Shown: in pieces, positions 6,000 through 32,775 of the stretch
Layout: each line of letters begins with the position of its first letter
Numbering within the stretch: position 1 is the first letter of the stretch
IMG/VR virus record: IMGVR_UViG_3300013120_000738
Span: 124,001-188,000 of that record
DNA: 64,000 bases
Direction: 5' to 3' (one strand)
Made by a program: the position numbers and the translations under genes
The notes under the pieces: generated by a model
Told to the model about the DNA's origin: nothing
Database searches by the model: none
The model's input: the letters and a program-made list of their open reading frames with translations, nothing else

Positions 6000-6983
6000 A
6001 TGGATTTATCACAGAAAAGAATTATAGTAACTGGTGGTCAAGGATTCCTGGGAAAACACGTATGTAGTATCCTCGAGAGACGAGGATGCAAAATCTCATC
6101 GCTCGTTAAGCAATATCATAAAGAACCCGGAGCATACGTAGTAAACGAATCGAGATTCGATCTAACGAAAGAAGAATGTATACAAGAGGTATATCATCAC
6201 GCACATCCGGAAGTAGTAATCCACCTTGCCGCAGTTGTAGGCGGTATTGGTGCTAATCGCCAGCACCCAGGTACATTCTTCTATAAGAATTTAATCATGG
6301 GTGCTATGCTTATGGAACACGCTAGACATCAAGCAGAAAAATGTGGTGTAAAAGTCGAGAAATTTGTAGCAATAGGTACTATTTGTGCATACCCAAAACA
6401 CACCCCAGTGCCATTCAAAGAAGAAGACCTCTGGAACGGGTATCCAGAAGAAACAAATGCACCATACGGACTAGCAAAGAAAATGATGTTGGTCCAGGCA
6501 CAATCATACAGACTTGAATTCGGATTTGATGCAGTTTACTTATTGCCAGTCAATCTCTACGGACCGGGTGATAATTTTAATTTAATTTCATCACATGTTA
6601 TCCCAGCACTCATCAGGAAATGTATAGAAGCTAGGGATGCTAATCAGGATTCGATAGAAGTATGGGGTACTGGAAATGCTACGAGAGAGTTTTTGTATGT
6701 AGAGGATGCTGCTAAAGCAATAATTATAGCCACTGAGGAATACGATAGTCCCGAGCCACTTAACATAGGTTCTGGTCAAGAAATTTCGATAAAAGACCTC
6801 GCAGAACTTATCAAGGAATTGACTGGCTTCAAGGGCGAATTTATATGGAATCCATCTTATCCAGATGGACAACCACGACGATGTTTAGATACAACAAGAG
6901 CTACGCAAGAACTTGGCTTCAAAGCACAAACAGATCTAAGGGAGGGCATATTAAAGACTATAGAATGGTATGAAGCTCAGTAA
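6000..6983 (+). CDS. fcl: GDP-L-fucose synthase
   Basis: [72 protein letters not shown]. Confidence 0.95.
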
Positions 6984-7794
6984 AGATACTACAGAGGTCA
7001 AGATGAAAAAGATTAAAGTATCTAGAGCATCCATCGAAAGAAAGACAATAAAGACTAAAAGGTCTGGAAATCCGCAACCAGTTCGAAAGACAGTAAAACC
7101 TCCTATACGACCGAAAGTATTAAGGAAAACACTGGCAATAAGGAAATCACCACCACTAAAACGTGATCCAGAAAGCATGTTACCTAATATATGTGTTAGG
7201 CCAGATTTTCCACTAGTAGTATCAGGTTACACAATTGATAGCCATATTGGTGATTATTATAAGCGTGCATCACACCGTTTATCAAATTCACTATTACGGT
7301 TCGATCTACCACATATAATCTTCCCTCTGAAGAGTACTGATGATTGGGCAAACAACTGTGCACTCAAACAAACACTGATATTATATGTCCTAGAGAATAT
7401 GAGATGCCCAGTACTCTGGATCGATATTGATGGAGAAGTATTCAATTTCCCAGATGCCTTTTTGAAACCTGATTTTGATATAGCATTAGTCAACTATGAC
7501 GGCCATTGGCTCACTGGAACAATGTTCCTATCACCGAAGACAACCGATTTTGTCAGGGAATGGAGAAAATTCACAAAGCCATCAGAGCCGGACGAAGTCT
7601 CATTACTACATCTTTATAATAATTCCGATAATGGATTAAAACTACGTATGTTGCCCAGAAAATACAATGAAATAGTGCATACGAGAACTGATGTATCAAG
7701 AATAATAGTTGGTCATTATATAAGAGCCGATGTGGCACCAAATAGAAAAGACGGGCAAGGAAATCCTCTAAAAGCAGTGCCCCTACCGAAGTAA
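6970..7794 (+). CDS. Nucleotide-diphospho-sugar transferase-like protein with basic N-terminus
   Basis: W..NCALK, VLWIDID (DxD), TGTMFL, DEVSL. Confidence 0.6.
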
Positions 7795-8475
7795 TCTCTC
7801 CTGCAAGGTTAACTTCATTCTTCTATTCCAGTTTATCCCGTCATCTTTAGCACTATCCATTAGTGGTCTATCGACTTCATCTGCTCGCCGTTTTTTGTTT
7901 GCCCAATTTCTATGTTCAAAACAGGGCGACTTATCACGAAGATCAACCAGTAGGTCTAATTCTAATAAATTATAATATAATTCCTGGTCAGAATAATTAT
8001 GAACATAGCTTGTATGATAGATGACCCTGTTTAGGCGCTTAAGGCATCCCATCGTCATTATTGGGATAGTAACAGCCTCATTTCTATAATATCCATCTGC
8101 AACAAGAATTGCTGATGGGTCTTCTATAGTATCAATAATCCATCTATCCCAGTTCTTCGGCGGGTAAAAATCATCAGATGCTAATATTACCACATCTGTG
8201 TCAGGACCTTCAACCATGTCCGCTAGTCTCTGGCAAGAATGTGTAACTCCTTGGACATCACCAGTTACTACAACTTCTCCTACTCTTATTCGTAGTTTGT
8301 GCTCTTCGGTGTTTACACCCACTAATAATGTGTGATTATTTGGATTATGTGACATTTTTCGCCACCGAGTATAGGTGGCTTGCATCATTTCAGGTCTTTT
8401 TGTGGGCCATAAGAGATGTATCATTGCTCTCTTCTTGCGATATGCCTTAGATGTTTTGACTTGTATTATTCTCAC
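7783..8475 (-). CDS. GT-A fold (GT2-like) glycosyltransferase
   Basis: LWPTKRP, ILASDDFYP, IPIMT, YSDQE. Confidence 0.65.
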   Translation of the reverse strand: MRIIQVKTSKAYRKKRAMIHLLWPTKRPEMMQATYTRWRKMSHNPNNHTLLVGVNTEEHKLRIRVGEVVVTGDVQGVTHSCQRLADMVEGPDTDVVILASDDFYPPKNWDRWIIDTIEDPSAILVADGYYRNEAVTIPIMTMGCLKRLNRVIYHTSYVHNYSDQELYYNLLELDLLVDLRDKSPCFEHRNWANKKRRADEVDRPLMDSAKDDGINWNRRMKLTLQERLLR

Positions 8476-9074
8476 AACGTTACTCTAAGATCAGCTTCTA
8501 CTTTCGCAATCCACCAATTATGATAATCGCCAGTGTGCACGGAGCGGAAGATTTCATCTACTGCTCTAGATACGCCAGCATTAGCCTCATGCCCGTAATC
8601 GTGGCCACTTAGAATTCCAATTTTAGAAATTTTTGGCCACCATGCAAATATGTCAGCACGAACAGCGTCATATGTATGTTTTGCATCTATATACACAAGA
8701 TCAAGTGAGCAATCGGGAAATTCTTCAGTAACTTCTGGAGAGTGTCTTTGTATAGCATCAAATCTCTCCCCAAATTGTTTCTTCATCCTATCTATAGGTG
8801 CGGTTGTTAATTTCCCTTGATTATTCTTGATATTCTCAAAATGGCGGTCGACGGACCATACTCTCACATTTGGAAATTCTATTAAAACTATTTCAGAGAG
8901 TTGGCAGCCACATGCCCCAACTTCCACAAAAGACCTCAACCCATGCTTACGAATTAACGAACAGATTACCGGTGCTGTCCGGCGATGCCCCCAACCTTTA
9001 ACAAATCGATCATCTGGGCCACGACGCTCATTCATTACCCGGTCTACAGCTTTTTGTCTTTTGAATTTATACAT
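8472..9074 (-). CDS. Class I SAM methyltransferase (Methyltransf_24-like)
   Basis: FVEVGAC, SLDLVYIDAKHTYDAVRADI..W..GILSGHDY; start reassigned to ATG 9074. Confidence 0.85.
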   Translation of the reverse strand: MYKFKRQKAVDRVMNERRGPDDRFVKGWGHRRTAPVICSLIRKHGLRSFVEVGACGCQLSEIVLIEFPNVRVWSVDRHFENIKNNQGKLTTAPIDRMKKQFGERFDAIQRHSPEVTEEFPDCSLDLVYIDAKHTYDAVRADIFAWWPKISKIGILSGHDYGHEANAGVSRAVDEIFRSVHTGDYHNWWIAKVEADLRVTL

Positions 9075-9105
9075 ATGGTATCTACCTAAGAGGGATAACT
9101 GTAAA

Positions 9106-10134
9106 ATGGCAAACCCAAAGAATTTAAGATTTGCTTTCGTCAAGCAAGAGATCCATAGTGACTTATATAATTGCCAACACGATGCTGATCCAGCTACTAA
9201 GATATTATCATCATTATCAAGAGTAGGACCAAGTGGATTATTCACTCTGTATGACGCAGATTTCTATGTGGTAAAGGTCGATAAAGCTCCAGAGTGCCAG
9301 ACATGGCAAGAAGTCAGAAAAAGAATACAAAATAGACGTAGACTAGCAGAAAGACATAAGAAATATAGCATCAGCGTGGATGATGTAAAATGGTCTGATT
9401 ATGATATAGTTATATGTCTAGATATATCCATTCCAGAACGTATAGTCAAAAAATATAGACGAACTTTGTGGTGCTATATGCCAACAGAACCATCATGTAT
9501 GGCATCGTACAAAGGACCTTTAAGAGCTAGTTACAATGCTAGATTGAACCAAGATGTTGGACGGACAATACAAACTAAATTCGGGGTGGTATGCTTTCCA
9601 TATTCGTTTATAGAGCCCGGATCATTAAAAAAATTATCCACCAACCATTCCGGCCCACAAAAGAAAGACGGTGTATTCGTAGAATATAATTGGGTACAAA
9701 CCAGTAATAAAGCTATGAAAATCAAAGGGCTAGGTCCAGTCCGTACAATAGTCCCAGCAGCAGGAAAGAGATCACAAGACCCAAATACCCCATATATTTC
9801 TGCTGTAGATCACAGGATACGCACAATAGATAGACTATGTGCCTCGAAATTCTTCCTCAAGTATGGTGGTAGAATAATTCGTGGTAATTCTATAGCAGAG
9901 GCTATGGCATGTAACGCAGTAGCTGTATGTAAACCATCACTCATAATATATAGTCAATTACTATGTAAACGAGCACGAATTAAAGGATTGGCAGAGGCGA
10001 TAGAATTTATTAAAAGTGTAGACGAAACCACTAGACAACAAATGATCAAACGACAAAACGAATTAATGTGGTCCCTATTGATCAATAGACCAATACAATC
10101 ATTAATGAACTTATTTGAGCTTAAAAGAAAATGA
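9106..10134 (+). CDS. Putative glycosyltransferase (GT-B-like)
   Basis: Start reassigned to MANPKNLRF; GNSIAEAMACNAV motif; island context. Confidence 0.5.
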   Translation: MANPKNLRFAFVKQEIHSDLYNCQHDADPATKILSSLSRVGPSGLFTLYDADFYVVKVDKAPECQTWQEVRKRIQNRRRLAERHKKYSISVDDVKWSDYDIVICLDISIPERIVKKYRRTLWCYMPTEPSCMASYKGPLRASYNARLNQDVGRTIQTKFGVVCFPYSFIEPGSLKKLSTNHSGPQKKDGVFVEYNWVQTSNKAMKIKGLGPVRTIVPAAGKRSQDPNTPYISAVDHRIRTIDRLCASKFFLKYGGRIIRGNSIAEAMACNAVAVCKPSLIIYSQLLCKRARIKGLAEAIEFIKSVDETTRQQMIKRQNELMWSLLINRPIQSLMNLFELKRK

Positions 10135-11090
10135 TAAAAATCTACACAGAATTCAAAGCTGTAAGAAAGAAATTACATATTGCTAGGGCTATAGCACCAT
10201 TTGCCCCTTTCGAAACTCACCACCGTGAAAAACACCCGGCCTATTTCAGAAAAGCAGACCAACTAATAACTATCACAGGTCTTAAAGACTGTGATGTTGC
10301 TATCTATCCAGAAGAATGGCAAGGTAAAAAAGATCAGCACCTCACTAAATTCGTCGATAGGGTAAGAAAAGCCGGTAAGAGAACAGTAGTATTCATGGTC
10401 CAGGACTTTCCACGCAATCCTAATGAAGGATTGGGTTCGTACAAACATCCAGATGTTATTATATTAAAAACATCATGCTACGCCAGTAAAGGCGATACAC
10501 ATGCATTATCTGCGCTACGACCAGACATGCGTGAATTTGCCGATCAGTATAAAATAAGCACTGCACCGAGAGGATGGAAAGATGTACCAACGATTGGCTT
10601 CTGCGGTCAATCCAATACTAGCTTACGATCTAGAATTGTTAAGTCGATTAGAGATAGTGGCCTTAATGATAATTTCATTATACGTCCAAGTTTTTGGGCA
10701 GGATTACCAAGGGATGCTATAATAAATCGTACAGAGAGATACCATAAAGTACGAAGAGAATTTATCCAAAATATGACTCAATCTGATTATTGTCTGTGTA
10801 TGAGAGGTGCTGGAAATTTCTCATTACGGATGTGTGAAGCTATGGCATGTTCCCGTATCCCCGTGTTTATCAATACTGATTGTGTGTTACCATATATGAA
10901 TCATATACCATGGAGAGACATAGTAGTATGGGTTGATAGACCTCGTGATGTGGTTAATGATATTAGAGAATTTCATAAGCGCACAAAACAATCTTTCCGG
11001 GAAGCTCAACAACGTTGTAGAGAGATATGGAAGGATTGGTTAAGTTTAGAGGGATATATATCGAAATTACATCTTATTTTATCAAAATAG
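10131..11090 (+). CDS. Exostosin-family (GT47) glycosyltransferase
   Basis: IGFCGQ, SDYCLCMRGAGNFSLRMCEAMACSRIPVFINTDCVLPY. Confidence 0.8.
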   Translation: MIKIYTEFKAVRKKLHIARAIAPFAPFETHHREKHPAYFRKADQLITITGLKDCDVAIYPEEWQGKKDQHLTKFVDRVRKAGKRTVVFMVQDFPRNPNEGLGSYKHPDVIILKTSCYASKGDTHALSALRPDMREFADQYKISTAPRGWKDVPTIGFCGQSNTSLRSRIVKSIRDSGLNDNFIIRPSFWAGLPRDAIINRTERYHKVRREFIQNMTQSDYCLCMRGAGNFSLRMCEAMACSRIPVFINTDCVLPYMNHIPWRDIVVWVDRPRDVVNDIREFHKRTKQSFREAQQRCREIWKDWLSLEGYISKLHLILSK

Positions 11091-11652
11091 GAGGCATTGT
11101 CTCTATTCTTGTGATTAAATTCCTATAGATTCTGGTTAGAGCCTCTTGGACATGAGGCGGTTGCTTCCGCCAATCACTTTTCCTTTTCTTCCTCTCTAAC
11201 TTTAGTCTACGTCCAAAGAACTCACTTATTTCATCAAGATGATCAAACATTGTTTCGTATTTTATGAATATTATATTATTTATTTTAGCAGTTACCCAAT
11301 TATCAAAATGTTTAGACAATCTAAATTGGTCTCTGCCTTCATCTAAGAATCCTTGAAGAGTTATAGATCCTGGAATTTTAACTCCGAGGTTCAAACCATG
11401 AAGATGACAAAATTTCTTGCCATGATTTTCATGTCTAAAAAAGAATGATAATACAGAATCACGTGGGTCACCGTAAATATATCCGGATTTCTCTTGTATC
11501 TTCTTTGGTGGCACACGACGATGTTTCAGGTGCCCATGATTAGGAATACCTAATGCCCGACGCAAGGCTGTAGTACAACAACCACCATAACTATATATTT
11601 CAGACATATCCTTCTTCTTGGCCGGTACCGCAATCTCTTTATAAGTTGGCAT
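11074..11652 (-). CDS. Sulfotransferase-like protein
   Basis: SYGGCCTT, YIYGDPRDSVLS, IFIKYE; start reassigned to MPTYKE. Confidence 0.5.
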   Translation of the reverse strand: MPTYKEIAVPAKKKDMSEIYSYGGCCTTALRRALGIPNHGHLKHRRVPPKKIQEKSGYIYGDPRDSVLSFFFRHENHGKKFCHLHGLNLGVKIPGSITLQGFLDEGRDQFRLSKHFDNWVTAKINNIIFIKYETMFDHLDEISEFFGRRLKLERKKRKSDWRKQPPHVQEALTRIYRNLITRIETMPPILIK

Positions 11653-11657
11653 ATAAA

Positions 11658-12131
11658 ATGCTACCAATATACCAAGGAAACCCATACGCAATAGATGAGA
11701 ATGAATGGAATCTACTGATAGAATTCCTAAGATCGAATAATATAAGATCAGTCATTGAATTTGGCGTTGGTATCTCAACCAAATTATTTTTGGCCATGTG
11801 TAGCAGAGTAGTCTCTTACGAACATGACCAGGACTGGGCATCCAAATTTGATCATGATGTAATCCTCTATGACCCTATGAAACCAATACAGTATATCGAT
11901 GAAAAATTTGACCTCGCGTTTGTAGATGGTCCAAATGGAAAATTCAGAATTCCTGATAATTGTAGTAGGTACTATACTACGGAAGCTGCGAAAAAGCATT
12001 CTGATATAATCATAATTCATGACTCAAAACGAGATGGTGAGACAGAGACAATAAGAAGATTATTATCAGATTGGCAGAGACAAGATTTACCATCGGCAAG
12101 AGGATTGACCATATTTAGGAGAAAAGGATGA
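11658..12131 (+). CDS. Class I SAM methyltransferase
   Basis: VIEFGVGIST, SYEHD, FDLAFVDGP, IIIHD. Confidence 0.75.
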   Translation: MLPIYQGNPYAIDENEWNLLIEFLRSNNIRSVIEFGVGISTKLFLAMCSRVVSYEHDQDWASKFDHDVILYDPMKPIQYIDEKFDLAFVDGPNGKFRIPDNCSRYYTTEAAKKHSDIIIIHDSKRDGETETIRRLLSDWQRQDLPSARGLTIFRRKG

Positions 12132-13315
12132 AGGTTTTTATAGCAGGTATTGATGGATATCTCGGCTGGCCACTAGCGATGCATCTCTCACAACGTGGTC
12201 ATCAAGTATCAGGTTGTGATACATTGGTCAGACGTAAATGGGTTGCGGAGATGGGAAGTGTATCTGCTATTCCTATCGCAGACTTACCAAGACGACAAAC
12301 ATTGTTCAAGGCTGCATTCAATCATCATCTCGACATACATTTATTAGATCTGACTAATTATCATCGTATAGCAGAAGTGCTAAAAAACGTAGAACCAGAC
12401 GTTATCGTGCACTTCGCTGAGATGCCATCGGCACCATATAGTATGGTAGACTTCGAACATTGTGTTTATACCCATACTAATAATATCAATGGCACACTTG
12501 TCCTACTCCACGCAATGCGAGATGTATGCCCAAATGCTCACCTATTGAAGTTAGGCACGATGGGTGAATATGGTACACCGAATGTGGATATCCCAGAAGG
12601 ATATTTCGATATCGAATATCGCGGTCGACGAGAAGTATTGCCATTCCCAAGGCAAGCTGGTAGTTGGTATCATCAAACCAAAGTCCACGATAGCCATAAC
12701 ATTATGCTTGCCTGCAGAATCTGGGGACTCAAATCCACCGATATTATGCAAGGAGTCGTATATGGTAGTGCTGATATTATGGATGAATACCCAGAACTTG
12801 CTACCAGATTTGATTTTGATCAATGCTTTGGAACGGCCATAAACCGATTTTGTATGCAGGCTGTATTGGGGATTCCAATCACACCATATGGAAAAGGAAA
12901 ACAAAAACGTGGTTTCATTCCTCTAAAGGACTCGATGCAATGTCTTACGCTGGCAGCTGAAAATCCTCCTGAAGATGGCGAATACCGCGTATTTAACCAA
13001 TTCGAAGAAGTGTATGATGTTACTACACTTGCAAATATAGTAGCTAAAGCCGCAAAAAAATTAGGACAGTCTGTTGAAATACGAAATTTAACAAACCCGA
13101 GAAAAGAACAAGAAGATCATTATTACAATCCTGATCATCGACGTTTATTAGAACTTGGGTACGAACCGACAACTGATATTGCGGCTGAAGTCCGTACGAC
13201 ATTAGCTAGATTACTTCCATATAGGGAACAATTAGAGGCGTATAAAGATGTCGTCATACCAGACATTAGATGGGACGGAACAACCAGAAGAAGCGAATAT
13301 CTACCAACATCATGA
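12128..13315 (+). CDS. sqdB: UDP-sulfoquinovose synthase
   Basis: GIDGYLGWP, HFAEMPSAPYSM, HLLKLGTMGEYGTPN, GSWYHQTKVHDS, TDIMQGVVYG, FGTAINRF, GEYRVFNQF. Confidence 0.93.
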   Translation: MKVFIAGIDGYLGWPLAMHLSQRGHQVSGCDTLVRRKWVAEMGSVSAIPIADLPRRQTLFKAAFNHHLDIHLLDLTNYHRIAEVLKNVEPDVIVHFAEMPSAPYSMVDFEHCVYTHTNNINGTLVLLHAMRDVCPNAHLLKLGTMGEYGTPNVDIPEGYFDIEYRGRREVLPFPRQAGSWYHQTKVHDSHNIMLACRIWGLKSTDIMQGVVYGSADIMDEYPELATRFDFDQCFGTAINRFCMQAVLGIPITPYGKGKQKRGFIPLKDSMQCLTLAAENPPEDGEYRVFNQFEEVYDVTTLANIVAKAAKKLGQSVEIRNLTNPRKEQEDHYYNPDHRRLLELGYEPTTDIAAEVRTTLARLLPYREQLEAYKDVVIPDIRWDGTTRRSEYLPTS

Positions 13316-13997
13316 TCTACAGGATATCGAGATCACGTTTAGAGGTAGAAAAATACGAGTATTCGACGGAGATAAACTAGGAGCTCACCTTGCAAAAGGA
13401 CGATATTATGATATAGAGAATCTTAGATTAACTAAACAATATATAGGGCCTGATACAATAGTTATAGATATTGGTGCTAATATTGGAAATCATTCTCTCT
13501 ATTATCTTATTGAATGTGGATGCAAAAACGTCCATGCATTTGAACCAGTACCAGAAACATTCGCTTTATTATTACATAATTTAAAAGATTTTAGTAATGC
13601 TTTATCGTACAATATTGGACTTAGCGATGAAGTGCGAACATATGACCATGGCGGTATAAATCCAGAACGCGTTGGCTCAACAGTATTTGCTGAATCAGAT
13701 ACTGGCACCGTATTTCAGACGCTCGATGAATATGAACTTAATGCTGGTTTTATCAAAATCGACGTAGAAGGTTTTGAACTCAATGTTTTGAAAGGTGCAT
13801 TAGAAACCATACATAGATGTAGACCAGTAATAGCTGTAGAAGTAAGAGAAACTGAAGCTATATCCGCTGGGATGGGGCAACATCTACCAGAAACTGCCGT
13901 AGTAGTTAAAGAATTTCTACTGTCTGAAGGTTACAAAATTAGAACAACTAGAACAGGTGCAACACAATTCATATGTATACCGACATCACCATCATAA
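13248..13997 (+). CDS. FkbM-family methyltransferase
   Basis: IDIGANIGNHS, AFEPVP, IKIDVEGFELNVLKGA. Confidence 0.92.
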   Translation: MSSYQTLDGTEQPEEANIYQHHDLQDIEITFRGRKIRVFDGDKLGAHLAKGRYYDIENLRLTKQYIGPDTIVIDIGANIGNHSLYYLIECGCKNVHAFEPVPETFALLLHNLKDFSNALSYNIGLSDEVRTYDHGGINPERVGSTVFAESDTGTVFQTLDEYELNAGFIKIDVEGFELNVLKGALETIHRCRPVIAVEVRETEAISAGMGQHLPETAVVVKEFLLSEGYKIRTTRTGATQFICIPTSPS

Positions 13998-15461: not shown

Positions 15462-16088
15462 ATGAATATCTATTGTTACTATACCCAATCACATGATGTT
15501 TTCTTCAGAGAATGGTTTACAGCGACCATCCAAGATAAGTTTAAAATTGTAAGTACTAGAGACACAACCCAATATTGCAAAACAGCCAGTTACCGAACCA
15601 AAGGTTGGAGAGAAACACAAATAAAGAAAATCAAATTATGGCTAAGAGCTATTAATACTACAGACGTATTCATAGGATCCGATGTCGACATCCAATGGTT
15701 TGGTCCAACAAAGAAAGTCCTATTAAAAGAATTGGGAAAAAGAGATCTCGCTATCCAGTCATACGGAGGTGGTACTGTTTGTTCAGGATTTTTCATTTGC
15801 CGCAGTAATGAAAGAACAAAAAAGCTCTGGACAGCAGTGTTAGAAGGACTTCGTAATAACAAATCACAAGGTGAACAGGATATTTTACAAGGGCACCTGA
15901 ATAACGGGATGGTAAGGTGGACAGAACTATCAAGGAATTTATTCTGGACACCCAACAAAGAATGTGCCCTAAAAAATCTCAAGGTTCCTGATAAGGTATT
16001 GTTACATCATGCTACTTACGTAGTTGGTGTCGATGCTAAGATAAAACAGATGAAATACGTAAGAGATATCGTAAGGCAACGGAAATGA
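15462..16088 (+). CDS. Nucleotide-diphospho-sugar transferase (GT77-like)
   Basis: GSDVDIQWF, VCSGFFI, GEQDIL, HHAT..K. Confidence 0.75.
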   Translation: MNIYCYYTQSHDVFFREWFTATIQDKFKIVSTRDTTQYCKTASYRTKGWRETQIKKIKLWLRAINTTDVFIGSDVDIQWFGPTKKVLLKELGKRDLAIQSYGGGTVCSGFFICRSNERTKKLWTAVLEGLRNNKSQGEQDILQGHLNNGMVRWTELSRNLFWTPNKECALKNLKVPDKVLLHHATYVVGVDAKIKQMKYVRDIVRQRK

Positions 16089-17177: not shown

Positions 17178-18143
17178 AATAATACTTGTAATAAGCGAGC
17201 CTACCACCAAGTATATGGTTAGGATCTATCATTCCTATATATCTTCCATATAGTTCTCTATTTTTAATATCATCGATCGGATAATACTTCTCCCTACCTT
17301 CAATCCAGTCTTGAGGATATTCCTTAGTGATAATCGTCCGAGGATTGTCCGAGAAGTCAAAATGTTTATGTTCAATAATTCTAGTATATGGGGTTTGTTC
17401 TTCAGTATAATTAACCGCAGCTACTCCTTGATAATCACCACTATGTTCTTCCTCTTCGAATCGTAGACTACGCCACTCTAATGCACCATGAGTATAACCA
17501 AAATATTCATCAATCGCTCCAGTAAATACTGTTCTATTCGCAGACGCATCAAGTCCTCTTCTATCACTAAAATAATCAACTCCCAGATGTACTGGAATAC
17601 CCTGTAGTAATCTTTCGAATATAGCAATATACCCGCCTATTGGTATCCCTTGATATTGTACATTATAATAATTATCATCATACGTGAGCCGTATAGGCAC
17701 CCTCATACCAATTGCTTTCGGTAACAATCGAGGCTCTTTTCCCCATTGTTTTTTAGTATATCCATAAAAGAAAATTTGATATATTTCCTCGCCAACTTGC
17801 GATAAAAGCCATTCTTCCAGATTGCTAGGATTATCTGTAGGCACGCGGACTTGCTCGAGTTGAGCTCGAGCTTCTCTCGGTGTGGTAACACCCCATAATT
17901 GATATAATGTTAGTAAATTTATTGGAAAGGAGTAATATATTTCCAGATTTTGTCGCTTCCAGTGTTAAATATATGTGGCCCATATTGATGTACGTGAATA
18001 CCATTCCTATTGTGTGTATAACAATTGCCACCTATATGGTTTCTTCTATCAATAACGAGAATTTTGGCCCCACGATCGGTCATCTCTCGTGCAAAGACAG
18101 ATCCAAATAGGCCCGCACCAACCACTAGATAGTCATATTTCAT
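17107..18143 (-). pseudogene. glf: UDP-galactopyranose mutase with internal deletion and frameshift
   Basis: N-part VVGAGLFG..HIGGNCY..GPHIF..IWKYI, then a frame change to YSFPINLLTLYQLWGVTTP..YQGIP..RIIEHKHF..GRLAYYKY; roughly 20 aa missing relative to typical Glf. Confidence 0.88.
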
Positions 18144-18969: not shown

Positions 18970-18989
18970 CCAAAATGTATTAATAAAGC

Positions 18990-20275: not shown

Positions 20276-21559
20276 TTATCCACGATTCATATAGGGTATA
20301 ACAGGGATATGCGGATACGGTCTAGGAGTTGGATCCTCAGCAGCAATCAAAGCCCTCATTAATTTAAACCGCATCTTATTAAGGATTTTCCACCGTCGTT
20401 TACCCTCTGGCACGACTCTTAGATTTTTCTCTTCCTCAGGGTCAGTTATTAAATCAAATAAATATTCCTGAGTACCATATATCCAATATTTATAACGTGT
20501 ATCCCGTATCATTCGCAATTTAGGCTGCCAACCCATCATCGATAACACATAGTCGTTTATCGGATCACCGGTCGAAAAAGCTTCAAACAATGATCTACCT
20601 TGAGCAGCTAGTGGTATCGGCTGATCAATCATAGTTAATATAGTCGGTAATATATCAATATGTTGTACTAAGTGCTTATATCGATCAGGCTTTAACATTG
20701 GAGCCTTAATAAGTAATGGAACTCTCGTATTGCCTTCGTAAGTGTACATTCCTTTTGAGAAATGCCCATGATCTCCTAGAATATCTCCATGATCAGAAGT
20801 AAAGATTATTATCGTATCATCATCTACAGCAGCTAGCAATCGACCAATATTACTATCAATCCATGATATTCCACGATAATAAAAAGCTTTTATTTTATGC
20901 CAATCATCTGCAGTAAGAGCACCACCATCAACATCTTCACTTTCACGAGGTATATCGAATTTGATTTTACCATATAATTTATTATATGGTGGCGGAGCTG
21001 TGTATGGTGGATGGGGTCCGACATAGCTGACTACAGTAAAGTGTGGAGATCGTGCAGTTTTCAGATGCTTAATCGCTAAATCGGTAATCACCTCTTCGTG
21101 ATGAAGGCGTCGATTATTAATAGATCCATACCACCCACGCATATTCATTAGTCTATCATATTGATGTACAATCTGATAATAATCTCTTCTCCAATCTGAA
21201 GTAAAGTATGATCGCGAGAAACCAAAATGCCCCGATAATTTATGTTCATCCTGTTTTTCTGATATATGGATTTTTCCAAAATATGCTGTATTATATCCAG
21301 CATTTTGAAGATAATTGGCTATTGTATATTCATTAGTTGGTAAATCTATAGCATTTAGCCACAATCTATGAGCAGTCGGATATCGGCCGGTTAACAGAGA
21401 AGCTCTACTAGGTTGGCATTGTGGGCTCTGACAGAAAGCATTCGTACAATCAATACTACGAGCCGCTAATCTATCTAAGTGTGGTGTTTTAATCCACTTG
21501 GTTCTATATCCAACAGCATCCCATCGTTGCTGATCTGTGAGAATCAATAGTATATTCAT
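20276..21559 (-). CDS. Cys-type sulfatase
   Basis: NILLILTDQQR, CQPSRASLLTG (CxPxR), GKIH, PHPPY, FTSDHGD, RVPLLI, DILPTI. Confidence 0.93.
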   Translation of the reverse strand: MNILLILTDQQRWDAVGYRTKWIKTPHLDRLAARSIDCTNAFCQSPQCQPSRASLLTGRYPTAHRLWLNAIDLPTNEYTIANYLQNAGYNTAYFGKIHISEKQDEHKLSGHFGFSRSYFTSDWRRDYYQIVHQYDRLMNMRGWYGSINNRRLHHEEVITDLAIKHLKTARSPHFTVVSYVGPHPPYTAPPPYNKLYGKIKFDIPRESEDVDGGALTADDWHKIKAFYYRGISWIDSNIGRLLAAVDDDTIIIFTSDHGDILGDHGHFSKGMYTYEGNTRVPLLIKAPMLKPDRYKHLVQHIDILPTILTMIDQPIPLAAQGRSLFEAFSTGDPINDYVLSMMGWQPKLRMIRDTRYKYWIYGTQEYLFDLITDPEEEKNLRVVPEGKRRWKILNKMRFKLMRALIAAEDPTPRPYPHIPVIPYMNRG

Positions 21560-23201: not shown

Positions 23202-23280
23202 ATGGCAAAAAGAGCAGTAGTAAGTGTAGCAAGCAGGTCCAAACTAATTACCAAATCAGGATTCAACAACTACGAATTAA
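23202..23280 (+). pseudogene. 5' fragment of a radical SAM paralogue (MAKRAVVSVASRSKLITKSGFNNYE)
   Basis: Aligns with the N-terminus of 26276-27301; has its own promoter motif (~23126-23153) and GGAGG. Confidence 0.8.
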
Positions 23281-23521
23281 CAACATATTGGCTATCGGAA
23301 AAAACTCGGACATGACATGGCTCTTTTAGGGCTCGTAATGCCTCTAAAACACCCATAATTTCCATACGGTTGTTGGTGCTTTCTTCCTCATTGCCACTTA
23401 TCTCCCTTCTGTGAACGCGACCTACACTATCTGTGTATAGCAAAATCGCTGCCCAACCACCGGGACCTGGGTTTGGTTCACAAGCACCATCAGTATAAAT
23501 TGTAATTACTTTTTCGTCCAT
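23270..23521 (-). pseudogene. rnhA: Truncated RNase HI paralogue
   Basis: Matches 18990-19496 up to YVVNS, then TAG; C-terminal half absent. Confidence 0.88.
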
Positions 23522-23542
23522 AGTTTTATAATACGTCTCACA

Positions 23543-24367
23543 TTATACGCCTAAGTATGGTGTTTTAATCCGAATCCATCCTAATCTAGATAAGTTCTTT
23601 TTGAATCTTACAGCTGTTAGATCCTCTACTTGTGAGTATTCGCCATCTATCTTATCAAAAAGTGTCTTATCTTTAAATCCTTCCATATCACCTTTACCTC
23701 GAGCAACCTTTTCCATATATTCTCTTTTTGAACGAAAATAATAATGATTGATTTGAGCTACTTCTATATTCACATCAACAAACGGTCCATCCACTCTAAT
23801 TCCTTGACAATTCACTGCATGGTGACCATTCTTATAGAAGAAAAAGTGTGGACAACTTGGTATTTTTCGTTTAATTCTACCGGGTTGGATAATGCTTTTC
23901 ACATGTCTATTAACAGGATTATTTTCGGTTGCTTTCCATACTAGAGAATCTATTTGGTTTTCATCCTTATCTCTGGTCAATTTACCATTCGCACCAAACA
24001 TCTGCCAATTAATTACTAGTGCCCCATAGTTCTTATATCGTGACAATAATGTATATATATTATCATCTTGTTTTGGTATGATAAATTCATCAGTATCAAT
24101 AAATGCCATCCATTCATATTTTGGGCCTAGATTGACTACGGCACTTAGATAAACTAATAGTTGTCGACTAGCGATTGTATCACGTACTATATGGACTTCA
24201 GTCGCTTCACGTAAGACTTTAGGGAATGTTGATACTGTATCAATTAGTGGTATGTTAGAATGGTCGTCGAAAATGAGTAATTTGTCGAAGCCAATAGCAT
24301 AGTGCCACTCGCACCACTCATGCAAATAGGCATTTTCGTTGCGACACATTACAACAGCAGCTATCAT
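23543..24367 (-). CDS. GT92-like glycosyltransferase, paralogue of 18142-18969
   Basis: Collinear similarity over the full length. Confidence 0.85.
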   Translation of the reverse strand: MIAAVVMCRNENAYLHEWCEWHYAIGFDKLLIFDDHSNIPLIDTVSTFPKVLREATEVHIVRDTIASRQLLVYLSAVVNLGPKYEWMAFIDTDEFIIPKQDDNIYTLLSRYKNYGALVINWQMFGANGKLTRDKDENQIDSLVWKATENNPVNRHVKSIIQPGRIKRKIPSCPHFFFYKNGHHAVNCQGIRVDGPFVDVNIEVAQINHYYFRSKREYMEKVARGKGDMEGFKDKTLFDKIDGEYSQVEDLTAVRFKKNLSRLGWIRIKTPYLGV

Positions 24368-25030
24368 TTTATTGCTGACAATATTTTATTAGAAACTGTT
24401 GTACAGAACTTATCCCAATTACAAGACTCGACCCATTGACGTTGTTTAAGCGATTGATCTATTAATTGTTTGTTAGGCATTGATTGGACATTATGTAATA
24501 CTTCAACCATTTCTTCTACATTGGTTGGATTCAAACTCCAAAAGGGTTGATTTGGCCAATAGCCTGATTGTGGTGTGCATAACACAATCAATCCTAGGCT
24601 ACCAGCCTCGGTACATGTTGTTGGGTTTGCATCAGATATTGAGGTGTTGACAAATATGTCGGCTGTTTTACATAGGTCACTACAGAATTGTGGTGTGATA
24701 GTGGTGTATCCGTGATAGTGCACATTAGGTAGATTGACAATTGGGTTGCTTATATTACCATACATATGTAAGGTATATCGGACTCTTTTAAACAATTCAT
24801 GAAGTATTTTAATTCCCTTTTCTGGCACATCGCTTCCGATATAAGCAAAAACGCGACTACCAGGTGCATTAAATGTTTGTTTGAAGTGTGGAAAATGTAC
24901 TGTGTCTATAGCTATATCTAGTCTTGTAATTTTTGGTTTCCAGTGGGCGAATGGTGATGATTCTAAGTTGTCATACCAATATGGTCCCATAATCGAGAAA
25001 ATAAAATCTGCTTGTCTCGCTAGACCCAGT
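24364..25030 (-). pseudogene. GT4-like glycosyltransferase, probably 5'-truncated
   Basis: ADIFVNTSISDANPTTCTEA motif; frame extends upstream of ATG 24990 (ILGLARQADFIFSIMGPYW) to a junction. Confidence 0.55.
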
Positions 25031-28791: not shown

Positions 28792-28905
28792 ATGCGAGTA
28801 CTACTCATCGGTAATCACGGAGCTTATCACCACGGAAGTAAACAAGTTATTAAGTATCTCCATGACGATATACTCGCATGTGGGCATAAGCCTATTGTTA
28901 AATGG
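28792..28905 (+). pseudogene. 5' fragment of a Rossmann-like gene (MRVLLIGNHGAYHHG...)
   Basis: Protein-like N-terminus that runs into the antisense of the next gene. Confidence 0.45.
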
Positions 28906-29243
28906 TCTGCATTAGGCAAACTAGGTTTAGATCGAGAAGCAAGTGGCCAAGCACAACCTCTTCTATATGGTTTTTCACCATTTATAGAGTACATTATGAA
29001 TTTAGCTTTTGGCATACCATCTGGTAAACCATCTTCTGCTGCCCACTTCTTTGCTTTTTTTCTATAGATAATATTTGGAGAATTTACATACCATATATCA
29101 CATCTAGTCGGGCCTTCATAATAATTAATTCGTACGACAACATCATATGGTTCCAAGTCATCATTCGTCAACTCTGTTACAGCATTTCCAATAATTAGTA
29201 CGTTTTTATTTCTGCAATATTCTATTATATCATTAAGTTCCAT
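28905..29243 (-). pseudogene. GT29 (sialyltransferase-motif)-like protein, 3'-truncated
   Basis: NVLIIGNA..DVVVRIN..CDIWY resembles the L-motif; degenerates after PNAD. Confidence 0.5.
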
Positions 29244-29563: not shown

Positions 29564-29671
29564 TTCAGCCTCCACAATGTTAGAGATTCTTTCAATTAGA
29601 AATATTTGACTTAACCTAATACCCCTCCAGTGTAACATGTTAAGGACAATCTAACCCCTAAGGAGTAGAAT

Positions 29672-29932: not shown

Positions 29933-29946
29933 ATACATGGCTTAAT

Positions 29947-30411: not shown

Positions 30412-30420
30412 GAGAAACAA

Positions 30421-30639: not shown

Positions 30640-30640
30640 A

Positions 30641-31516
30641 ATGGGTACAACAAGATATGGCCGACTTGGGCACCAATTCAAGGATATAATATCAGCCATA
30701 ATAATAGCAAAAGCATTCAATATAGGCTATCTCCACACAGGATGGAAAAACGTAGGGATAGCACGCCTTAGAGAATGGGAACCATTTTTCGCAATAGGTA
30801 ACGGTGAAATATGTATACCACATATTGCTAAAAATAAATTACGTATACAATCATCATACTGGGATAAACCACCAAAAATATTAAGCACCAGAAATACACG
30901 TGAATACTTAGGATATGAACAAGTCAAAGCACTACTAGACCAATTAGATGACGGTGACATACTAAACCTCGCAAAATCAACAAGAGTAAACCACAAAGTC
31001 CTACGACAATGGGAAAATAAAGGCCTAGTGCCTGAAGGTACATATACAACATTTCGTGAAATACTGCGACAAAAATTTGAGAATTCAAGATTGGCGACAA
31101 GCACCTCAGTAGACTTCGAAAATAAAGCAAAAACAACAGTGGCAGTATATGTCAGAAGTGGGGGAAAACACGAGAACTATAAACAAAAGTCACGCCGCAA
31201 CACTCCAAAAGAACTGTATGATATAGCTATAGAAAGACTACACCAGAAATATGGTGATTTAGAAGTTAAATATTATACACAAGGACCGCTAGATAAATTA
31301 GATGGTGATTATTCAGATTGTGATATTCAAGTTTGTGACGAGAAATTTCCACAATTATATAGTGTACTTAAATCACTTATCGTGGCCGATGTTTTCATAA
31401 AAGCTAGAAGTGCAACATCTTTCCTAATTGGTATGTACCGATATGGACCAACTATAAGTCCGCGTAGTAGAAGATTAAGATTGCCAAATACTATTATCAA
31501 GCACCCAATGGCGTAA
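30641..31516 (+). CDS. GT11/NodZ-like fucosyltransferase-like protein
   Basis: GRLGHQF, VAVYVRSG, ADVFIKARSATSF. Confidence 0.55.
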   Translation: MGTTRYGRLGHQFKDIISAIIIAKAFNIGYLHTGWKNVGIARLREWEPFFAIGNGEICIPHIAKNKLRIQSSYWDKPPKILSTRNTREYLGYEQVKALLDQLDDGDILNLAKSTRVNHKVLRQWENKGLVPEGTYTTFREILRQKFENSRLATSTSVDFENKAKTTVAVYVRSGGKHENYKQKSRRNTPKELYDIAIERLHQKYGDLEVKYYTQGPLDKLDGDYSDCDIQVCDEKFPQLYSVLKSLIVADVFIKARSATSFLIGMYRYGPTISPRSRRLRLPNTIIKHPMA

Positions 31517-32117
31517 ATGAATAACGTCCTAATCTAATCTCTTCTGCAAATCTCTTGCGAACCATTTCTCTTAATTCATCATCATAATATGTTGAATAAT
31601 GTCTCTTTTTAGTCTGAGCAACATTGACCCTAGGTAAGTTAATTGCTCTAATCCCTATTTTCCTACAAGCCGTATTAAATCCCGCCTGAAGATTCTCGAA
31701 TTTTATAACAAAGTCAACATCGTCACCAAGTCTATGATCATCTAATGCAATAAAATATCGGGCCATTGTAAGCTTCTGGATAAGTTCTTTAAATTTCTTC
31801 CTATCAAAAGATTTCCTACCAGAATGCGGTGAAAGGTGATAGGACACCAACCGGTCCCAAGGATTTCGTATCACCGTAAATTTAAATAGACCAGCAAATA
31901 CCTTAGGCCGCAAAACATCTCTATAATAAGATAATGGAGAATGTTTTGTAGTCTTAAGCCTTCTATTTATTACTTCGAATCTATGTAATGTATCATTTGG
32001 GCCTTTCTGCACTGATTCAAGATTATCTTCTGAAAATTGTCGTAAATGATTTTGAATACTATTACCACCAGTCCTTGGTATATGGATAAAAAGAAATTTA
32101 TGCTTAAGTGACAACAT
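31497..32117 (-). CDS. Sulfotransferase family 2
   Basis: FIHIPRTGGNSI, FTVIRNPWDRLVSY, IKFENL, HYSTYY. Confidence 0.9.
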   Translation of the reverse strand: MLSLKHKFLFIHIPRTGGNSIQNHLRQFSEDNLESVQKGPNDTLHRFEVINRRLKTTKHSPLSYYRDVLRPKVFAGLFKFTVIRNPWDRLVSYHLSPHSGRKSFDRKKFKELIQKLTMARYFIALDDHRLGDDVDFVIKFENLQAGFNTACRKIGIRAINLPRVNVAQTKKRHYSTYYDDELREMVRKRFAEEIRLGRYSFTPLGA

Positions 32118-32775
32118 TTTCCCACATCTCTAAATCGTGTGCTAATATATTTTCAGCAATTCCCAATAATCTTTTAGTATAGTGCGTGCGCCATGGCCTA
32201 CGTTTTTTAGATCTTAAAGAATGTACTAATTTTATCTCGCCCCGCCCAAGCTTCCGCATAACAGCATTAACGCTATCATTTAAATTATCAAATGAACAAA
32301 GTGTATCAACTATTAATTGTCCATCATTATCACATACAAAATATGATTGTGTGATTGGCAAATCCTCATGAAAACAGCCTTCTAAAAACATATCGAATTT
32401 GTCGGTCTCTGCTAGATCTATAATCCTCAACATTTTATCGACGTGAATATCTAATTCATCACCGAATAACCTCCATAAGTGCTGACAACGCTTTTTCCTC
32501 ATTTCAAACCAAGTACGTCTACCTCTACCTCTCATAAAGTAGAATAGAGAGATACATCTTTGTAGAGGATTTCTAAATACGGCAAATGTCAGCTTATCAT
32601 TATAGTCACTGTGTGGTATTTGCCGCATATATTTTGCTGCGAGATGGAATCTATAGTGTGTATAACCAGATATATCCATTAGAGAGTATGCAATACTAGT
32701 GCTTGCACACTTCGGGATCATTATAAATATACAGTCTTGACATATCACAGTATATCTACAGAAACACCCCGGCAT
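32104..32775 (-). CDS. Sulfotransferase family 2 (start may be GTG ~32751)
   Basis: IPKCASTSI, FAVFRNPLQRCISLF, FDNL. Confidence 0.82.
   Translation of the reverse strand: MPGCFCRYTVICQDCIFIMIPKCASTSIAYSLMDISGYTHYRFHLAAKYMRQIPHSDYNDKLTFAVFRNPLQRCISLFYFMRGRGRRTWFEMRKKRCQHLWRLFGDELDIHVDKMLRIIDLAETDKFDMFLEGCFHEDLPITQSYFVCDNDGQLIVDTLCSFDNLNDSVNAVMRKLGRGEIKLVHSLRSKKRRPWRTHYTKRLLGIAENILAHDLEMWENVVT

What the first reader, a model, noticed from the sequence alone, without database searches (positions are those of the whole stretch)
6000..32775. Giant-virus-scale sulfated/fucosylated glycan toolkit in a bacteriophage
SEEN: fcl, a GT11-like gene, two GT47 exostosin-like genes, GT2/GT77/GT92/GT4/GT29-like genes, three sulfotransferase-like genes, three methyltransferases, a Cys-sulfatase and sqdB. 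ESTABLISHED: Planctomycetes specialise in sulfated polysaccharides, and NCLDVs glycosylate their capsids with their own enzymes. INFERENCE: the phage builds a sulfated, methylated, fucose-containing coat on the virion or remodels the host surface, for example for superinfection exclusion.
Basis: partly seen in the sequence, partly recalled or inferred. Interest (0 to 1): 0.6.

Follow-up and report, generated by a model that had tools for sequence, protein, structure and literature searches.

The report
Sulfated-glycan gene island in marine huge phage
An uncultured marine tailed phage with a genome of about 300-360 kb carries a swappable island of sugar-building, sulfating and methylating enzymes on the scale seen in giant viruses; it most likely decorates the phage particle or the host surface, and which of the two is untested.

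Summary
Window 4968-32775 lies in a 41 % GC metagenomic myovirus contig: 227.7 kb, about 63 % complete, with a tail sheath, DNA polymerase and gp32.

Supported by HMM or PDB sequence search:
- GDP-fucose synthase and UDP-sulfoquinovose synthase (SqdB, catalytic T/YHxxK intact)
- two GT47, a GT2, a GT77 and two GT92 genes
- a truncated GT4-like gene
- two Sulfotransfer_2 genes
- FkbM and Methyltransf_24 methyltransferases
- a Cys-type sulfatase (CQPSR, no signal peptide)

Supported only at fold or feature level: a third sulfotransferase, a GT11-like gene, a GT-A and a GT-B transferase. The "GT29-like" call fails every search. glf is broken.

The rest of the contig adds genuine Gmd and GalE, RmlA/B-like genes, five more GT genes and two more sulfotransferases.

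No enzyme has a membrane segment, and I found no flippase, polymerase, priming transferase, PAPS pathway or FGE.

Relatives (354-408 kb phages) keep fcl, the GT4-like gene and the sulfatase in synteny but swap the 12 kb between them.

In five of six other viral contigs examined, sqdB plus GT genes sit inside capsid or tail modules. I therefore favour virion glycosylation (0.42) over host-surface remodelling (0.3). The host is unknown; a Planctomycete host is unsupported. No RNA evidence was found.

The parts
4968..5873 (+). Aldo/keto reductase at the left edge of the island; a role in sugar metabolism is possible but not shown
   Evidence: Pfam Aldo_ket_red, 131.8 bits
6000..6983 (+). GDP-L-fucose synthase (Fcl). 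Conserved and syntenic in relatives at 64-65 % identity
6970..7794 (+). Probable GT-A glycosyltransferase with a DxD motif (WIDIDGE) and a basic N-terminal tail. Its start overlaps the fcl stop
   Evidence: No Pfam hit. The AF2 model is of low confidence (pLDDT 52). Foldseek hits are all GT-A. VIA gives Z 12.5, rmsd 3.3 Å over 152 residues, to PBCV-1 A64R
7783..8475 (-). Unresolved ORF; function not determined
   Evidence: No Pfam or NCBIfam hit
8472..9245 (-). Class I SAM methyltransferase (Methyltransf_24)
   Evidence: 50.4 bits; JGI gene call
9106..10134 (+). Probable GT-B glycosyltransferase; only the C-terminal nucleotide-sugar domain is modelled with confidence
   Evidence: VIA Z 10-11 to TreT, PglA, PimA and BshA C-terminal domains; Foldseek GT-B hits; only 3 homologues found
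10131..11090 (+). GT47 exostosin-like glycosyltransferase
   Evidence: PF03016, 47.5 bits, cut-off 33.4
11074..11691 (-). Sulfotransferase-like ORF (the third one)
   Evidence: No Pfam hit. Atlas feature score 0.96 and TM 0.82 to Sulfotransfer_1 clusters. It carries a 3'-PB-like DPRDxxLS motif
11646..12131 (+). Small SAM-methyltransferase-like ORF; its stop overlaps the sqdB start
   Evidence: GxG motif and a sub-threshold IRX15/GXM hit
12128..13315 (+). UDP-sulfoquinovose synthase (SqdB/SQD1)
   Evidence: Absent from 18 relatives; present in 12 other IMG/VR contigs
13248..13997 (+). FkbM-family methyltransferase
   Evidence: PF05050, 65.5 bits; TIGR01444, 80.5 bits
13973..14704 (+). GT2 glycosyltransferase
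   Evidence: PF00535, 51.3 bits
14697..15488 (-). GT2-like ORF, below threshold
   Evidence: PF00535, 20.4 bits, under the 23.3 cut-off
15462..16088 (+). GT77-type nucleotide-diphospho-sugar transferase
   Evidence: PF03407, 40.6 bits
16085..16906 (+). GT47 exostosin-like / RXYLT1_C glycosyltransferase
   Evidence: PF03016, 73.7 bits
17107..18143 (-). UDP-galactopyranose mutase (glf), broken. A 74-aa N-terminal fragment (18143-17922) ends at a stop at 17919-17921. The rest is in another frame, with roughly 25 residues missing
   Evidence: The same sequence is in the X1 contig and in the JGI gene call
18142..18969 (+). GT92 / Glyco_tranf_2_4 glycosyltransferase, copy 1
   Evidence: It is 61 % identical to copy 2
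20276..21559 (-). Cys-type S1 sulfatase. It has no signal peptide and is conserved in three relatives at 44-48 % identity
23543..24367 (-). GT92 / Glyco_tranf_2_4 glycosyltransferase, copy 2, the arm of a diverged inverted duplication
24364..24990 (-). GT4-like (Glycos_transf_1) gene, N-terminally truncated
   Evidence: 33.8 bits. It aligns only to residues 98-314 of the 318-aa G002 homologue
28827..29243 (-).
   Evidence: No Pfam, NCBIfam or PDB hit
30641..31516 (+). GT11-like / fucosyltransferase-superfamily candidate
   Evidence: No Pfam hit. Atlas feature score 0.97 and TM 0.72 to GT11-named clusters. The family has 32 members with invariant G10 and H11 and nearly invariant R172. The best PDB hit of the profile is POFUT1 at E = 0.27, not significant
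31497..32117 (-). Sulfotransfer_2 carbohydrate-type sulfotransferase
   Evidence: 43.4 bits
32104..32775 (-). Sulfotransfer_2 sulfotransferase
   Evidence: 26.1 bits, cut-off 22

Best explanation
SHOWN. The region is a hypervariable glycan-assembly island of an uncultured marine huge myovirus.
- Together with genes elsewhere on the contig, it encodes donor synthesis: Gmd and Fcl for GDP-L-fucose, SqdB for UDP-sulfoquinovose, GalE for UDP-galactose, and RmlA/B-like enzymes for a dTDP-6-deoxyhexose.
- It encodes at least 12 glycosyltransferase genes above their HMM cut-offs, about 16 if fold-level and feature-level leads are counted.
- It encodes at least 5 sulfotransferases, O-methyltransferases and one Cys-type sulfatase.
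- All of these are soluble proteins with no membrane segments.

INFERRED. The enzymes act in the infected cell's cytoplasm, using host UDP-glucose, sulfite, PAPS and SAM. They build a short, methylated, sulfated or sulfonated, fucose-containing heteroglycan directly on phage structural proteins. This would parallel how PBCV-1 glycosylates its capsid and mycobacteriophage Che8 its virions.

The cassette between the conserved fcl and sulfatase genes is exchanged between related phages, which would diversify the coat. The sulfatase either edits the sulfation pattern or recycles sulfate.
For: - Gene identities.
- No membrane segment in any island enzyme, and no polytopic protein of the Wzx, Wzy or WecA kind on the contig. 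No Bac_transf priming transferase.
- In other viral contigs, sqdB plus GT (and MT) genes lie inside morphogenesis modules: between the tail tube and the baseplate/tape measure, just upstream of the tail and tape-measure genes, and directly after the major capsid gene in three related contigs. That is 5 of the 6 contigs examined, from three lineages.
- The unannotated GT-A next to fcl has as its best structural match the PBCV-1 capsid-glycosylating A64R (Z 12.5). A075L appears among the Foldseek matches of the GT-B (E 3e-3 to 1e-2).
- Variable cassette within a conserved frame.
- The island's GC content (0.35-0.48) matches the phage backbone.
- Virion glycosylation by phage GT genes is established for Che8, as reported in PMC11256854.
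Against: - In this phage the island is not adjacent to identified structural genes. The tail sheath is about 115 kb away.
- No glycosylated acceptor protein was identified, and no Ser/Thr-rich structural protein stood out.
- There is no expression evidence.
- The structural-module context comes from unrelated phages and concerns sqdB only.
- Both AF2 models are of low confidence (pLDDT about 52).
- glf, the GT4-like gene and one ORF fragment are degraded, so part of the island may be inactive.
- A cytoplasmic sulfatase has no obvious role in coat building.
Confidence: 0.42

Rival explanations
1. Host-envelope remodelling. The soluble GT genes and sulfotransferases build or modify an undecaprenyl-linked O-antigen, capsule or EPS repeat. 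The host's own priming transferase, flippase and polymerase then export it. This changes the cell surface so that other phages, or progeny phages, cannot adsorb (superinfection exclusion). The same role has been proposed for cyanophage 'LPS' clusters.
For: - There is precedent, though only as hypothesis, for the 24 LPS genes of P-SSM2 (PMC1079782) and for jumbo-phage polysaccharide clusters (PMC7824862).
- Cytoplasmic-face O-antigen GT enzymes also lack membrane segments.
- The island is not in a structural module.
- Cassette turnover resembles that of O-antigen loci.
Against: - The 227 kb contig has no priming transferase, flippase, polymerase, ligase or GtrA-like protein.
- The cyanophage role itself has never been demonstrated.
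- In other phages sqdB modules sit in virion modules.
- The contig is only about 63 % complete, so absence is weak evidence.
Confidence: 0.3
2. A loose collection of auxiliary metabolic genes rather than one pathway. SqdB would raise sulfolipid (SQDG) synthesis to spare phosphorus for phage DNA. The sulfatase would free sulfate from host sulfate esters such as choline-O-sulfate. The GT genes would have unrelated targets.
For: - sqdB has been reported as a stand-alone viral AMG (PMC7785012).
- The sulfatase's best models are choline-sulfatase and arylsulfatase, and it is cytoplasmic.
- The sulfatase is conserved beside nucleotide-metabolism genes, not GT genes.
- The setting is marine.
Against: - No intact SqdX/SQD2-type GT4 is present; the only GT4-like gene is truncated.
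- sqdB's start and stop codons overlap those of methyltransferase and GT genes in one co-oriented run.
- The density, about 20 glycan-related ORFs out of about 29, is hard to explain as unrelated cargo.
Confidence: 0.12
3. Some or all of the GT enzymes glycosylate phage DNA (hypermodified bases) to evade restriction.
For: - The top Foldseek hits of the 9106-10134 model were T4 beta-glucosyltransferase.
- dUTPase/dCTP-deaminase-like, Dam and radical-SAM genes are interspersed in the island.
- The nearest GenBank tail sheath belongs to Bacillus phage SP-15, which I recall as having hypermodified DNA.
Against: - No ThyA-family hydroxymethylase is on the contig.
- The BGT match has rmsd 13 Å and was not among the top matches in the second aligner, where GT4-type C-terminal domains lead.
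- To my knowledge GT47, GT77, GT92, sulfotransferases and sulfatase have no known DNA role.
Confidence: 0.05
4. The island is largely decaying, horizontally acquired cargo with little current function.
For: - glf is broken.
- The GT4-like gene is truncated.
- There is a 138-aa orphan fragment, an HNH insertion and a diverged inverted duplication.
Against: - Most ORFs are intact.
- Their GC content matches the phage backbone.
- The sequence is at least 99 % identical, with only two single-base differences over the 6 kb laid, in two runs from two studies.
- fcl, the sulfatase and the GT4-like gene are conserved across phages that share only 70-74 % tail-sheath identity.
Confidence: 0.08

Closest known systems
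Cyanomyovirus P-SSM2 'LPS' gene clusters (24 genes), and the polysaccharide-modification clusters of jumbo cyanophages
   Same: Both are large phage-borne clusters of sugar epimerases, synthases and several GT families. Both vary between related phages and lack export machinery. A surface-remodelling role has been proposed for them (PMC1079782; PMC7824862).
   Different: This phage has a sulfation layer: at least 5 sulfotransferases, a sulfatase and SqdB. The jumbo-phage review contains neither 'sulfotransferase' nor 'sulfatase'. GT47-like homologues occur in only 4 of 50,697 GenBank phage records, sulfotransferase homologues in 4, and sqdB homologues in none. The lineage is also different: the tail sheath is at most 41 % identical to any GenBank phage.
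Chlorovirus PBCV-1 capsid glycosylation machinery (A064R, A075L, viral GMD/GMER) and Mimivirus fibril glycosylation clusters
   Same: In both cases the virus encodes its own GDP-fucose pathway together with soluble minimal GT-A and GT-B enzymes and methyltransferases that act in the cytoplasm. ORF 6970-7794 matches the A64R fold best (Z 12.5). A075L and Mimivirus R699/R655 also appear among the structural matches.
   Different: Those are eukaryotic viruses and this is a tailed phage. Sequence identity is only 5-16 %, so the resemblance is in fold and logic, not in family membership. To my knowledge, sulfation has not been described for those viral glycans.
Mycobacteriophage Che8 / cluster F1 virion glycosylation
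   Same: Phage-encoded GT enzymes attach glycans to capsid proteins (reported in PMC11256854). The other sqdB-bearing viral contigs have a comparable layout, with GT genes next to capsid or tail genes.
   Different: In this phage the island is far from the known structural genes, is about ten times larger, and includes sulfation and donor-synthesis genes.
UDP-sulfoquinovose synthase SQD1/SqdB/Agl3
   Same: The match is full-length, E = 1e-115 to 1QRR, with the catalytic residues conserved.
   Different: In cells, to my knowledge, the product goes into the lipid SQDG or into Sulfolobus N-glycans. Here no intact SqdX-type partner is present, and the neighbours are methyltransferases plus GT2 and GT47 genes. 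Identity to cyanobacterial SqdB is 44-49 %, against 58-60 % to other viral copies.

Membership tests
UDP-sulfoquinovose synthase (SqdB/SQD1, NF041015) | Full-length match to the equivalog model at or above its cut-off | tested here: inconclusive
   543.5 bits over positions 1-383 of 384, just under the 575-bit cut-off
UDP-sulfoquinovose synthase (SqdB/SQD1, NF041015) | Catalytic Thr plus the Tyr-His-x-x-Lys of SQD1 | tested here: met
   GTMGEYG and YHQTK align to GTMGEYG and YHLSK of 1QRR
GDP-L-fucose synthase (Fcl/GMER) | Best match among SDR families, with a partner Gmd present | tested here: met
   Top NCBIfam model at 272 bits (below the equivalog cut-off). The 18 best PDB hits are all GDP-fucose synthases. 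Gmd scores 456 bits against a 415-bit cut-off, at genome 33822-34763
Type I (S1) formylglycine sulfatase | Sulfatase domain with the C/S-x-P-x-R signature | tested here: met
   PF00884, 181 bits; CQPSR near the N-terminus; S1 sulfatases are the top PDB hits
Type I (S1) formylglycine sulfatase | A maturation enzyme (FGE or anSME) is available | tested here: not met
   No FGE on the contig. The island's radical SAM matches the PA0069, Rv2578c and SPL families, not anSME. A host enzyme would be needed
GT47 (exostosin) | Pfam PF03016 above the gathering score | tested here: met
   47.5 and 73.7 bits against a 33.4 cut-off. Only the C-terminal half of the profile is covered
GT11 alpha-1,2-fucosyltransferase | Pfam PF01531 match and the HxRRxD motif | tested here: not met
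   No PF01531 hit even at E <= 10. The motif region reads VRSGG, keeping only the first Arg. Atlas matches make it GT11-like in fold, not a demonstrated member
GT29 sialyltransferase | Pfam PF00777 match / sialyl motifs in a full-length catalytic domain | tested here: not met
   A 138-aa ORF with no Pfam hit at E <= 0.01 and no NCBIfam or PDB hit
PAPS-dependent carbohydrate sulfotransferase (Sulfotransfer_2) | PF03567 above the cut-off, with 5'-PSB and 3'-PB motifs | tested here: met
   43.4 and 26.1 bits. The motifs are P(R/K)xGxxS and RNPxxRxxS. Two more copies are elsewhere on the contig
PAPS-dependent carbohydrate sulfotransferase (Sulfotransfer_2) | PAPS-dependent catalytic activity and the nature of the acceptor | not testable with these tools
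   Needs an enzyme assay. There is no phage APS kinase or PAPS reductase
Wzx/Wzy- or ABC-dependent surface-polysaccharide gene cluster | A priming phosphoglycosyl transferase, flippase or ABC transporter, and a polymerase | tested here: not met
   No Bac_transf hit, and no protein with more than 4 hydrophobic segments on the contig. The contig is about 63 % complete
Phage virion-glycosylation module (Che8-type) | GT genes embedded in the structural operon | tested here: not met
   Not so in this phage, where the island is about 115 kb from the tail sheath. It is so in 5 of 6 other sqdB-bearing viral contigs
Phage virion-glycosylation module (Che8-type) | Glycan detected on capsid or tail proteins | not testable with these tools
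   Needs virions and mass spectrometry

The most novel reading that the evidence does not exclude
Tailed phages of several marine lineages coat their capsids or tails with sulfonated or sulfated glycans (sulfoquinovose, O-sulfate, O-methyl, fucose), using donors and transferases they encode themselves. To my knowledge this would be the first anionic, sulfated glycan coat on a bacterial virus. The huge phage studied here would carry the most elaborate, cassette-swapping version of it.
Probability: 0.3. Interest if true: 0.8.

Novelty: new variant of a known kind. Interest (0 to 1): 0.6.

Why it matters
Large glycan clusters in phages are known, but their targets remain unproven, and sulfation has hardly been considered. 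This phage lineage gives a concrete, testable set of genes: SqdB, at least five sulfotransferases, a sulfatase and a complete fucose pathway.

It also gives a comparative clue. In other phages, sqdB sits inside capsid and tail modules, which points to sulfated or sulfonated virion glycans.

If that is true, it would change how we think about several things: the surface chemistry of phage particles in seawater (charge, stickiness to gels and mucus, grazing and decay), the role of phages in organosulfur cycling, and convergence between huge phages and giant viruses.

The soluble minimal GT47, GT77 and GT92-like enzymes and the short sulfotransferases are also attractive as glyco-engineering enzymes.

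Tried and rejected
- **Host identification.** A scan of GTDB genomes with a tail-sheath profile found only small, probably mis-binned contigs in Asgard and Zixibacteria MAGs and a distant Nostoc homologue. Cyanobacterial SqdB is only 44-49 % identical. No host call can be made, and the Planctomycete idea stays untested.
- **Expression.** No RNA run holds the stretch, and two metatranscriptomes from the same study as a DNA holder laid nothing. This is not evidence of silence.
- **Promoter and terminator scan.** No enrichment over shuffled sequence, so it was not used.
- **anSME idea.** The island's radical SAM is of the PA0069, Rv2578c or SPL type. Rejected.
- **GtrA-like flippase idea.** The 4-TM protein next to gmd is a DUF2585 protein. 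Rejected.
- **Phage-encoded sulfur supply.** No APS kinase, PAPS reductase or FGE in the contig. APS kinase gave only marginal hits in 2 of 18 relatives.
- **Ser/Thr-rich acceptor proteins.** Nothing convincing.
- **Word-based homology searches.** For three unannotated ORFs these found 0-3 relatives each.
- **GT11-like family.** A PDB profile search gave only a non-significant POFUT1 hit.
- **Conserved flanking ORFs.** Searches of GenBank phages for 1645-2790 and 3528-4292 found nothing.
- **Assembly chimera as the cause of the high-GC half of the window.** Rejected: the same join is on 10 contigs, and the gene content there is phage-like.

Full report
**What the DNA is**

The window is bases 124001-188000 of a single 227,725-bp IMG/VR virus record. 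The record is linear, and CheckV estimates it at 63 % complete. It is a tailed phage:
- a 958-aa tail sheath (phrog_23, E = 1e-80);
- a family-B-type DNA polymerase, an NAD-dependent ligase, a helicase and SbcC;
- a gp32-like protein and a 5'-3' exonuclease.

No GenBank phage is close. Megablast finds nothing, and the best tail-sheath match is 41 % identical over a third of the protein.

A second IMG/VR record (G001) is 99.98 % identical over 55.9 kb and extends the genome by 66 kb beyond the contig start. Island proteins occur on contigs of up to 340 kb.

At least 172 IMG/VR contigs share the sheath at 54-76 % identity. They include four near-complete genomes of 354-408 kb, one of them with terminal repeats. 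This is therefore a lineage of huge phages.

The DNA is at least 99 % identical in two marine metagenome runs from two studies.

**Checking the gene list**

- Fcl, 6000-6983. The 18 best PDB hits are all GDP-fucose synthases.
- SqdB, 12128-13315. It scores 543.5 bits over the full length and E = 1e-115 to SQD1, with the catalytic Thr and YHxxK conserved.
- GT47 ×2, GT2, GT77 and GT92 ×2.
- A GT4-like gene.
- Sulfotransfer_2 ×2.
- FkbM and Methyltransf_24 methyltransferases.
- A Cys-type sulfatase with the CQPSR motif.

Independent JGI gene calls with precomputed Pfam hits agree.

Three calls are weaker:
- The third sulfotransferase (11074-11691) and the GT11-like ORF (30641-31516) have no Pfam hit. 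They rest on ESM-Atlas feature and structure matches.
- For the GT11-like ORF, the exhaustive search found a small family of 32 representatives with an invariant N-terminal Gly-His (G10, H11) and a nearly invariant Arg. Its profile reaches only a non-significant POFUT1 hit.
- The 'GT29-like' 138-aa ORF fails every search.

One of the 'three methyltransferases' is a Dam-type DNA methylase.

Two unannotated ORFs are probable transferases at fold level:
- 6970-7794 has a DxD motif, and its best structural match is the PBCV-1 capsid-glycosylating A64R (Z 12.5, rmsd 3.3 Å over 152 residues).
- 9106-10134 has a GT4-type C-terminal domain (Z about 11).

Both AF2 models are of low confidence (pLDDT about 52).

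Some genes are degraded:
- glf is split by a stop, a frame change and a short deletion.
- The GT4-like gene lacks the N-terminal third that a relative has.

**The toolkit is wider than the finding**

Elsewhere on the contig there are:
- a genuine Gmd (456 bits, above the cut-off), which completes the GDP-fucose pathway;
- a genuine GalE, plus RmlA-like and RmlB-like enzymes and another methyltransferase;
- a second cluster at 43.5-54.4 kb, with Glyco_tranf_2_5, Glyco_trans_1_2, a 653-aa double GT2 and two Sulfotransfer_2 genes;
- two further GT2 genes;
- one more sulfotransferase in the G001 extension.

The totals are at least 12 GT genes above their cut-offs (about 16 counting leads), at least 5 sulfotransferases and seven nucleotide-sugar enzymes, one of them broken. 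'Giant-virus scale' is a fair description.

**What is missing**

- No island enzyme has a hydrophobic segment. No protein on the contig has more than four.
- There is no Bac_transf priming transferase.
- There is no APS kinase, PAPS reductase or FGE.
- The island's radical SAM is SPL-like, not an anSME.
- There is no ThyA-type hydroxymethylase.

The enzymes are therefore cytoplasmic. They depend on the host for PAPS, sulfite and sulfatase maturation, within the limits of a 63 %-complete contig.

**Evolutionary pattern**

Three relatives (G002, G010, G012) share the following with this phage, in synteny: the ORFs left of the island, fcl (64-65 %), the GT4-like gene (42 %), RNase H, dUTPase and the sulfatase (44-48 %). 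The 12 kb between fcl and RNase H is not shared. This is the stretch with both GT47 genes, sqdB, the methyltransferases, the GT2 genes, GT77, glf and GT92.

G002 carries a different cassette there: ThyX, two radical SAM genes, a methyltransferase, a full-length GT4-like gene, a DNA methylase and a GT2.

Across 18 relatives:
- GT2 genes are universal, with 7-10 matches per near-complete genome;
- Sulfotransfer_2 occurs in 10;
- a sulfatase occurs in 3;
- GT47 occurs in none above the cut-off;
- sqdB occurs in none.

The island is thus a variable cassette in a conserved frame. Its GC content equals that of the phage backbone.

**The most informative comparison**

SqdB homologues (44-60 % identity) occur in 12 other IMG/VR contigs. 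These contigs share no other island gene with the window. I could examine six of them.
- In five, sqdB lies with GT genes (and in one case methyltransferases) inside the morphogenesis module:
  - between the tail tube and the baseplate/tape measure;
  - just upstream of the tail and tape-measure genes;
  - in three related contigs, directly after the major capsid gene and a ~950-aa triple GT.
- In one, the context is non-structural.

GT genes next to capsid and tail genes are what virion glycosylation would predict. Phage GT enzymes are reported to glycosylate the major capsid protein of mycobacteriophage Che8 (PMC11256854).

**Interpretation**

I favour cytoplasmic glycosylation of virion proteins with a sulfated or sulfonated, methylated, fucose-containing glycan (0.42).

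The rivals are:
- Host-surface remodelling, as proposed for the cyanophage P-SSM2 LPS clusters and for jumbo-phage polysaccharide clusters (PMC1079782, PMC7824862): 0.30.
- A loose set of auxiliary genes, including sulfolipid-based phosphorus sparing. There is precedent for sqdB as an AMG (PMC7785012): 0.12.
- Decaying cargo: 0.08.
- DNA glycosylation: 0.05.

The role of the conserved cytoplasmic sulfatase is unexplained. Editing of the sulfation pattern and sulfate scavenging are both guesses.

**Novelty**

Large phage glycan clusters and virus-encoded glycosylation are known. The sulfation layer is not.
- No paper in the library combines jumbo phage, sulfotransferase and glycosyltransferase.
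- A jumbo-phage review mentions neither sulfotransferase nor sulfatase.
- A 2026 survey of huge-phage proteins mentions only an AslB-type maturase.
- Among 50,697 GenBank phage records, sqdB homologues are absent, sulfotransferase and GT47-like homologues occur in 4 records each, and sulfatase homologues occur in 26, mostly fragments.

I rate this a new variant of a known kind.

**Limits**

- The host is unknown.
- There is no expression evidence.
- The two structural models are weak.

Noticed in passing
window 36000-64000 (genome 160-195 kb): A ~35 kb stretch at 0.52-0.58 GC with strongly negative GC skew, inside a 0.41 GC phage. Its genes are small, mostly on the minus strand, and lack Pfam hits apart from Endonuclease_7, DMP19, zf-dskA_traR and a ResIII-like helicase. 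The join is present on 10 contigs, so it is not a chimera. The cause is unexplained.
   Followed up: partly
other viral contigs: L132; L134; the contigs of L021, L022 and L023: In three unrelated phage lineages, sqdB plus GT (and MT) genes sit inside capsid or tail modules. This suggests sulfoquinovose-bearing virions.
   Followed up: partly
window 18142-19237 and 23274-24367: A diverged inverted duplication (75-78 % nucleotide identity, 61 % amino-acid identity) of the GT92 gene plus the 5' part of RNase H. It brackets the dUTPase, the sulfatase and four small ORFs.
   Followed up: yes
window 18140-18144: The glf start (minus strand) and the GT92 start (plus strand) overlap on a CATG palindrome. 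This leaves no intergenic space for divergent promoters.
   Followed up: no
window 25489-26184 (-), with 7 paralogues across the contig: A Cys-rich HNH-endonuclease-like multi-copy family. This copy lies next to the truncated GT4-like gene.
   Followed up: partly
genome 113062-122448 (+), just left of the window: A 3128-aa protein with VWA and trypsin-like protease domains. It is followed by a 159-aa ORF with a weak Sulfotransfer_4 hit and by NucS.
   Followed up: no
window 32903-33065 (-) and 33549-34343 (-): tRNA-Met (CAT) and tRNA-Pro (TGG) lie directly right of the island, followed by a DUF7873 protein at 320 bits.
   Followed up: no
window about 4307-4516 (+): A 69-aa CsrA-like ORF, called by JGI, between the conserved flanking genes and the island.
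   Followed up: no
genome 47479-49440 (-), with homologues in most relatives: A ~650-aa protein with two GT2 domains is conserved across most of the related contigs (14 of 18). It looks like a near-core gene of the lineage and lies near the replication genes.
   Followed up: partly
window 26276-27301 (+): A radical SAM protein of the PA0069, Rv2578c or spore-photoproduct-lyase type, next to a Dam methylase. It is probably DNA-related rather than glycan-related.
   Followed up: partly
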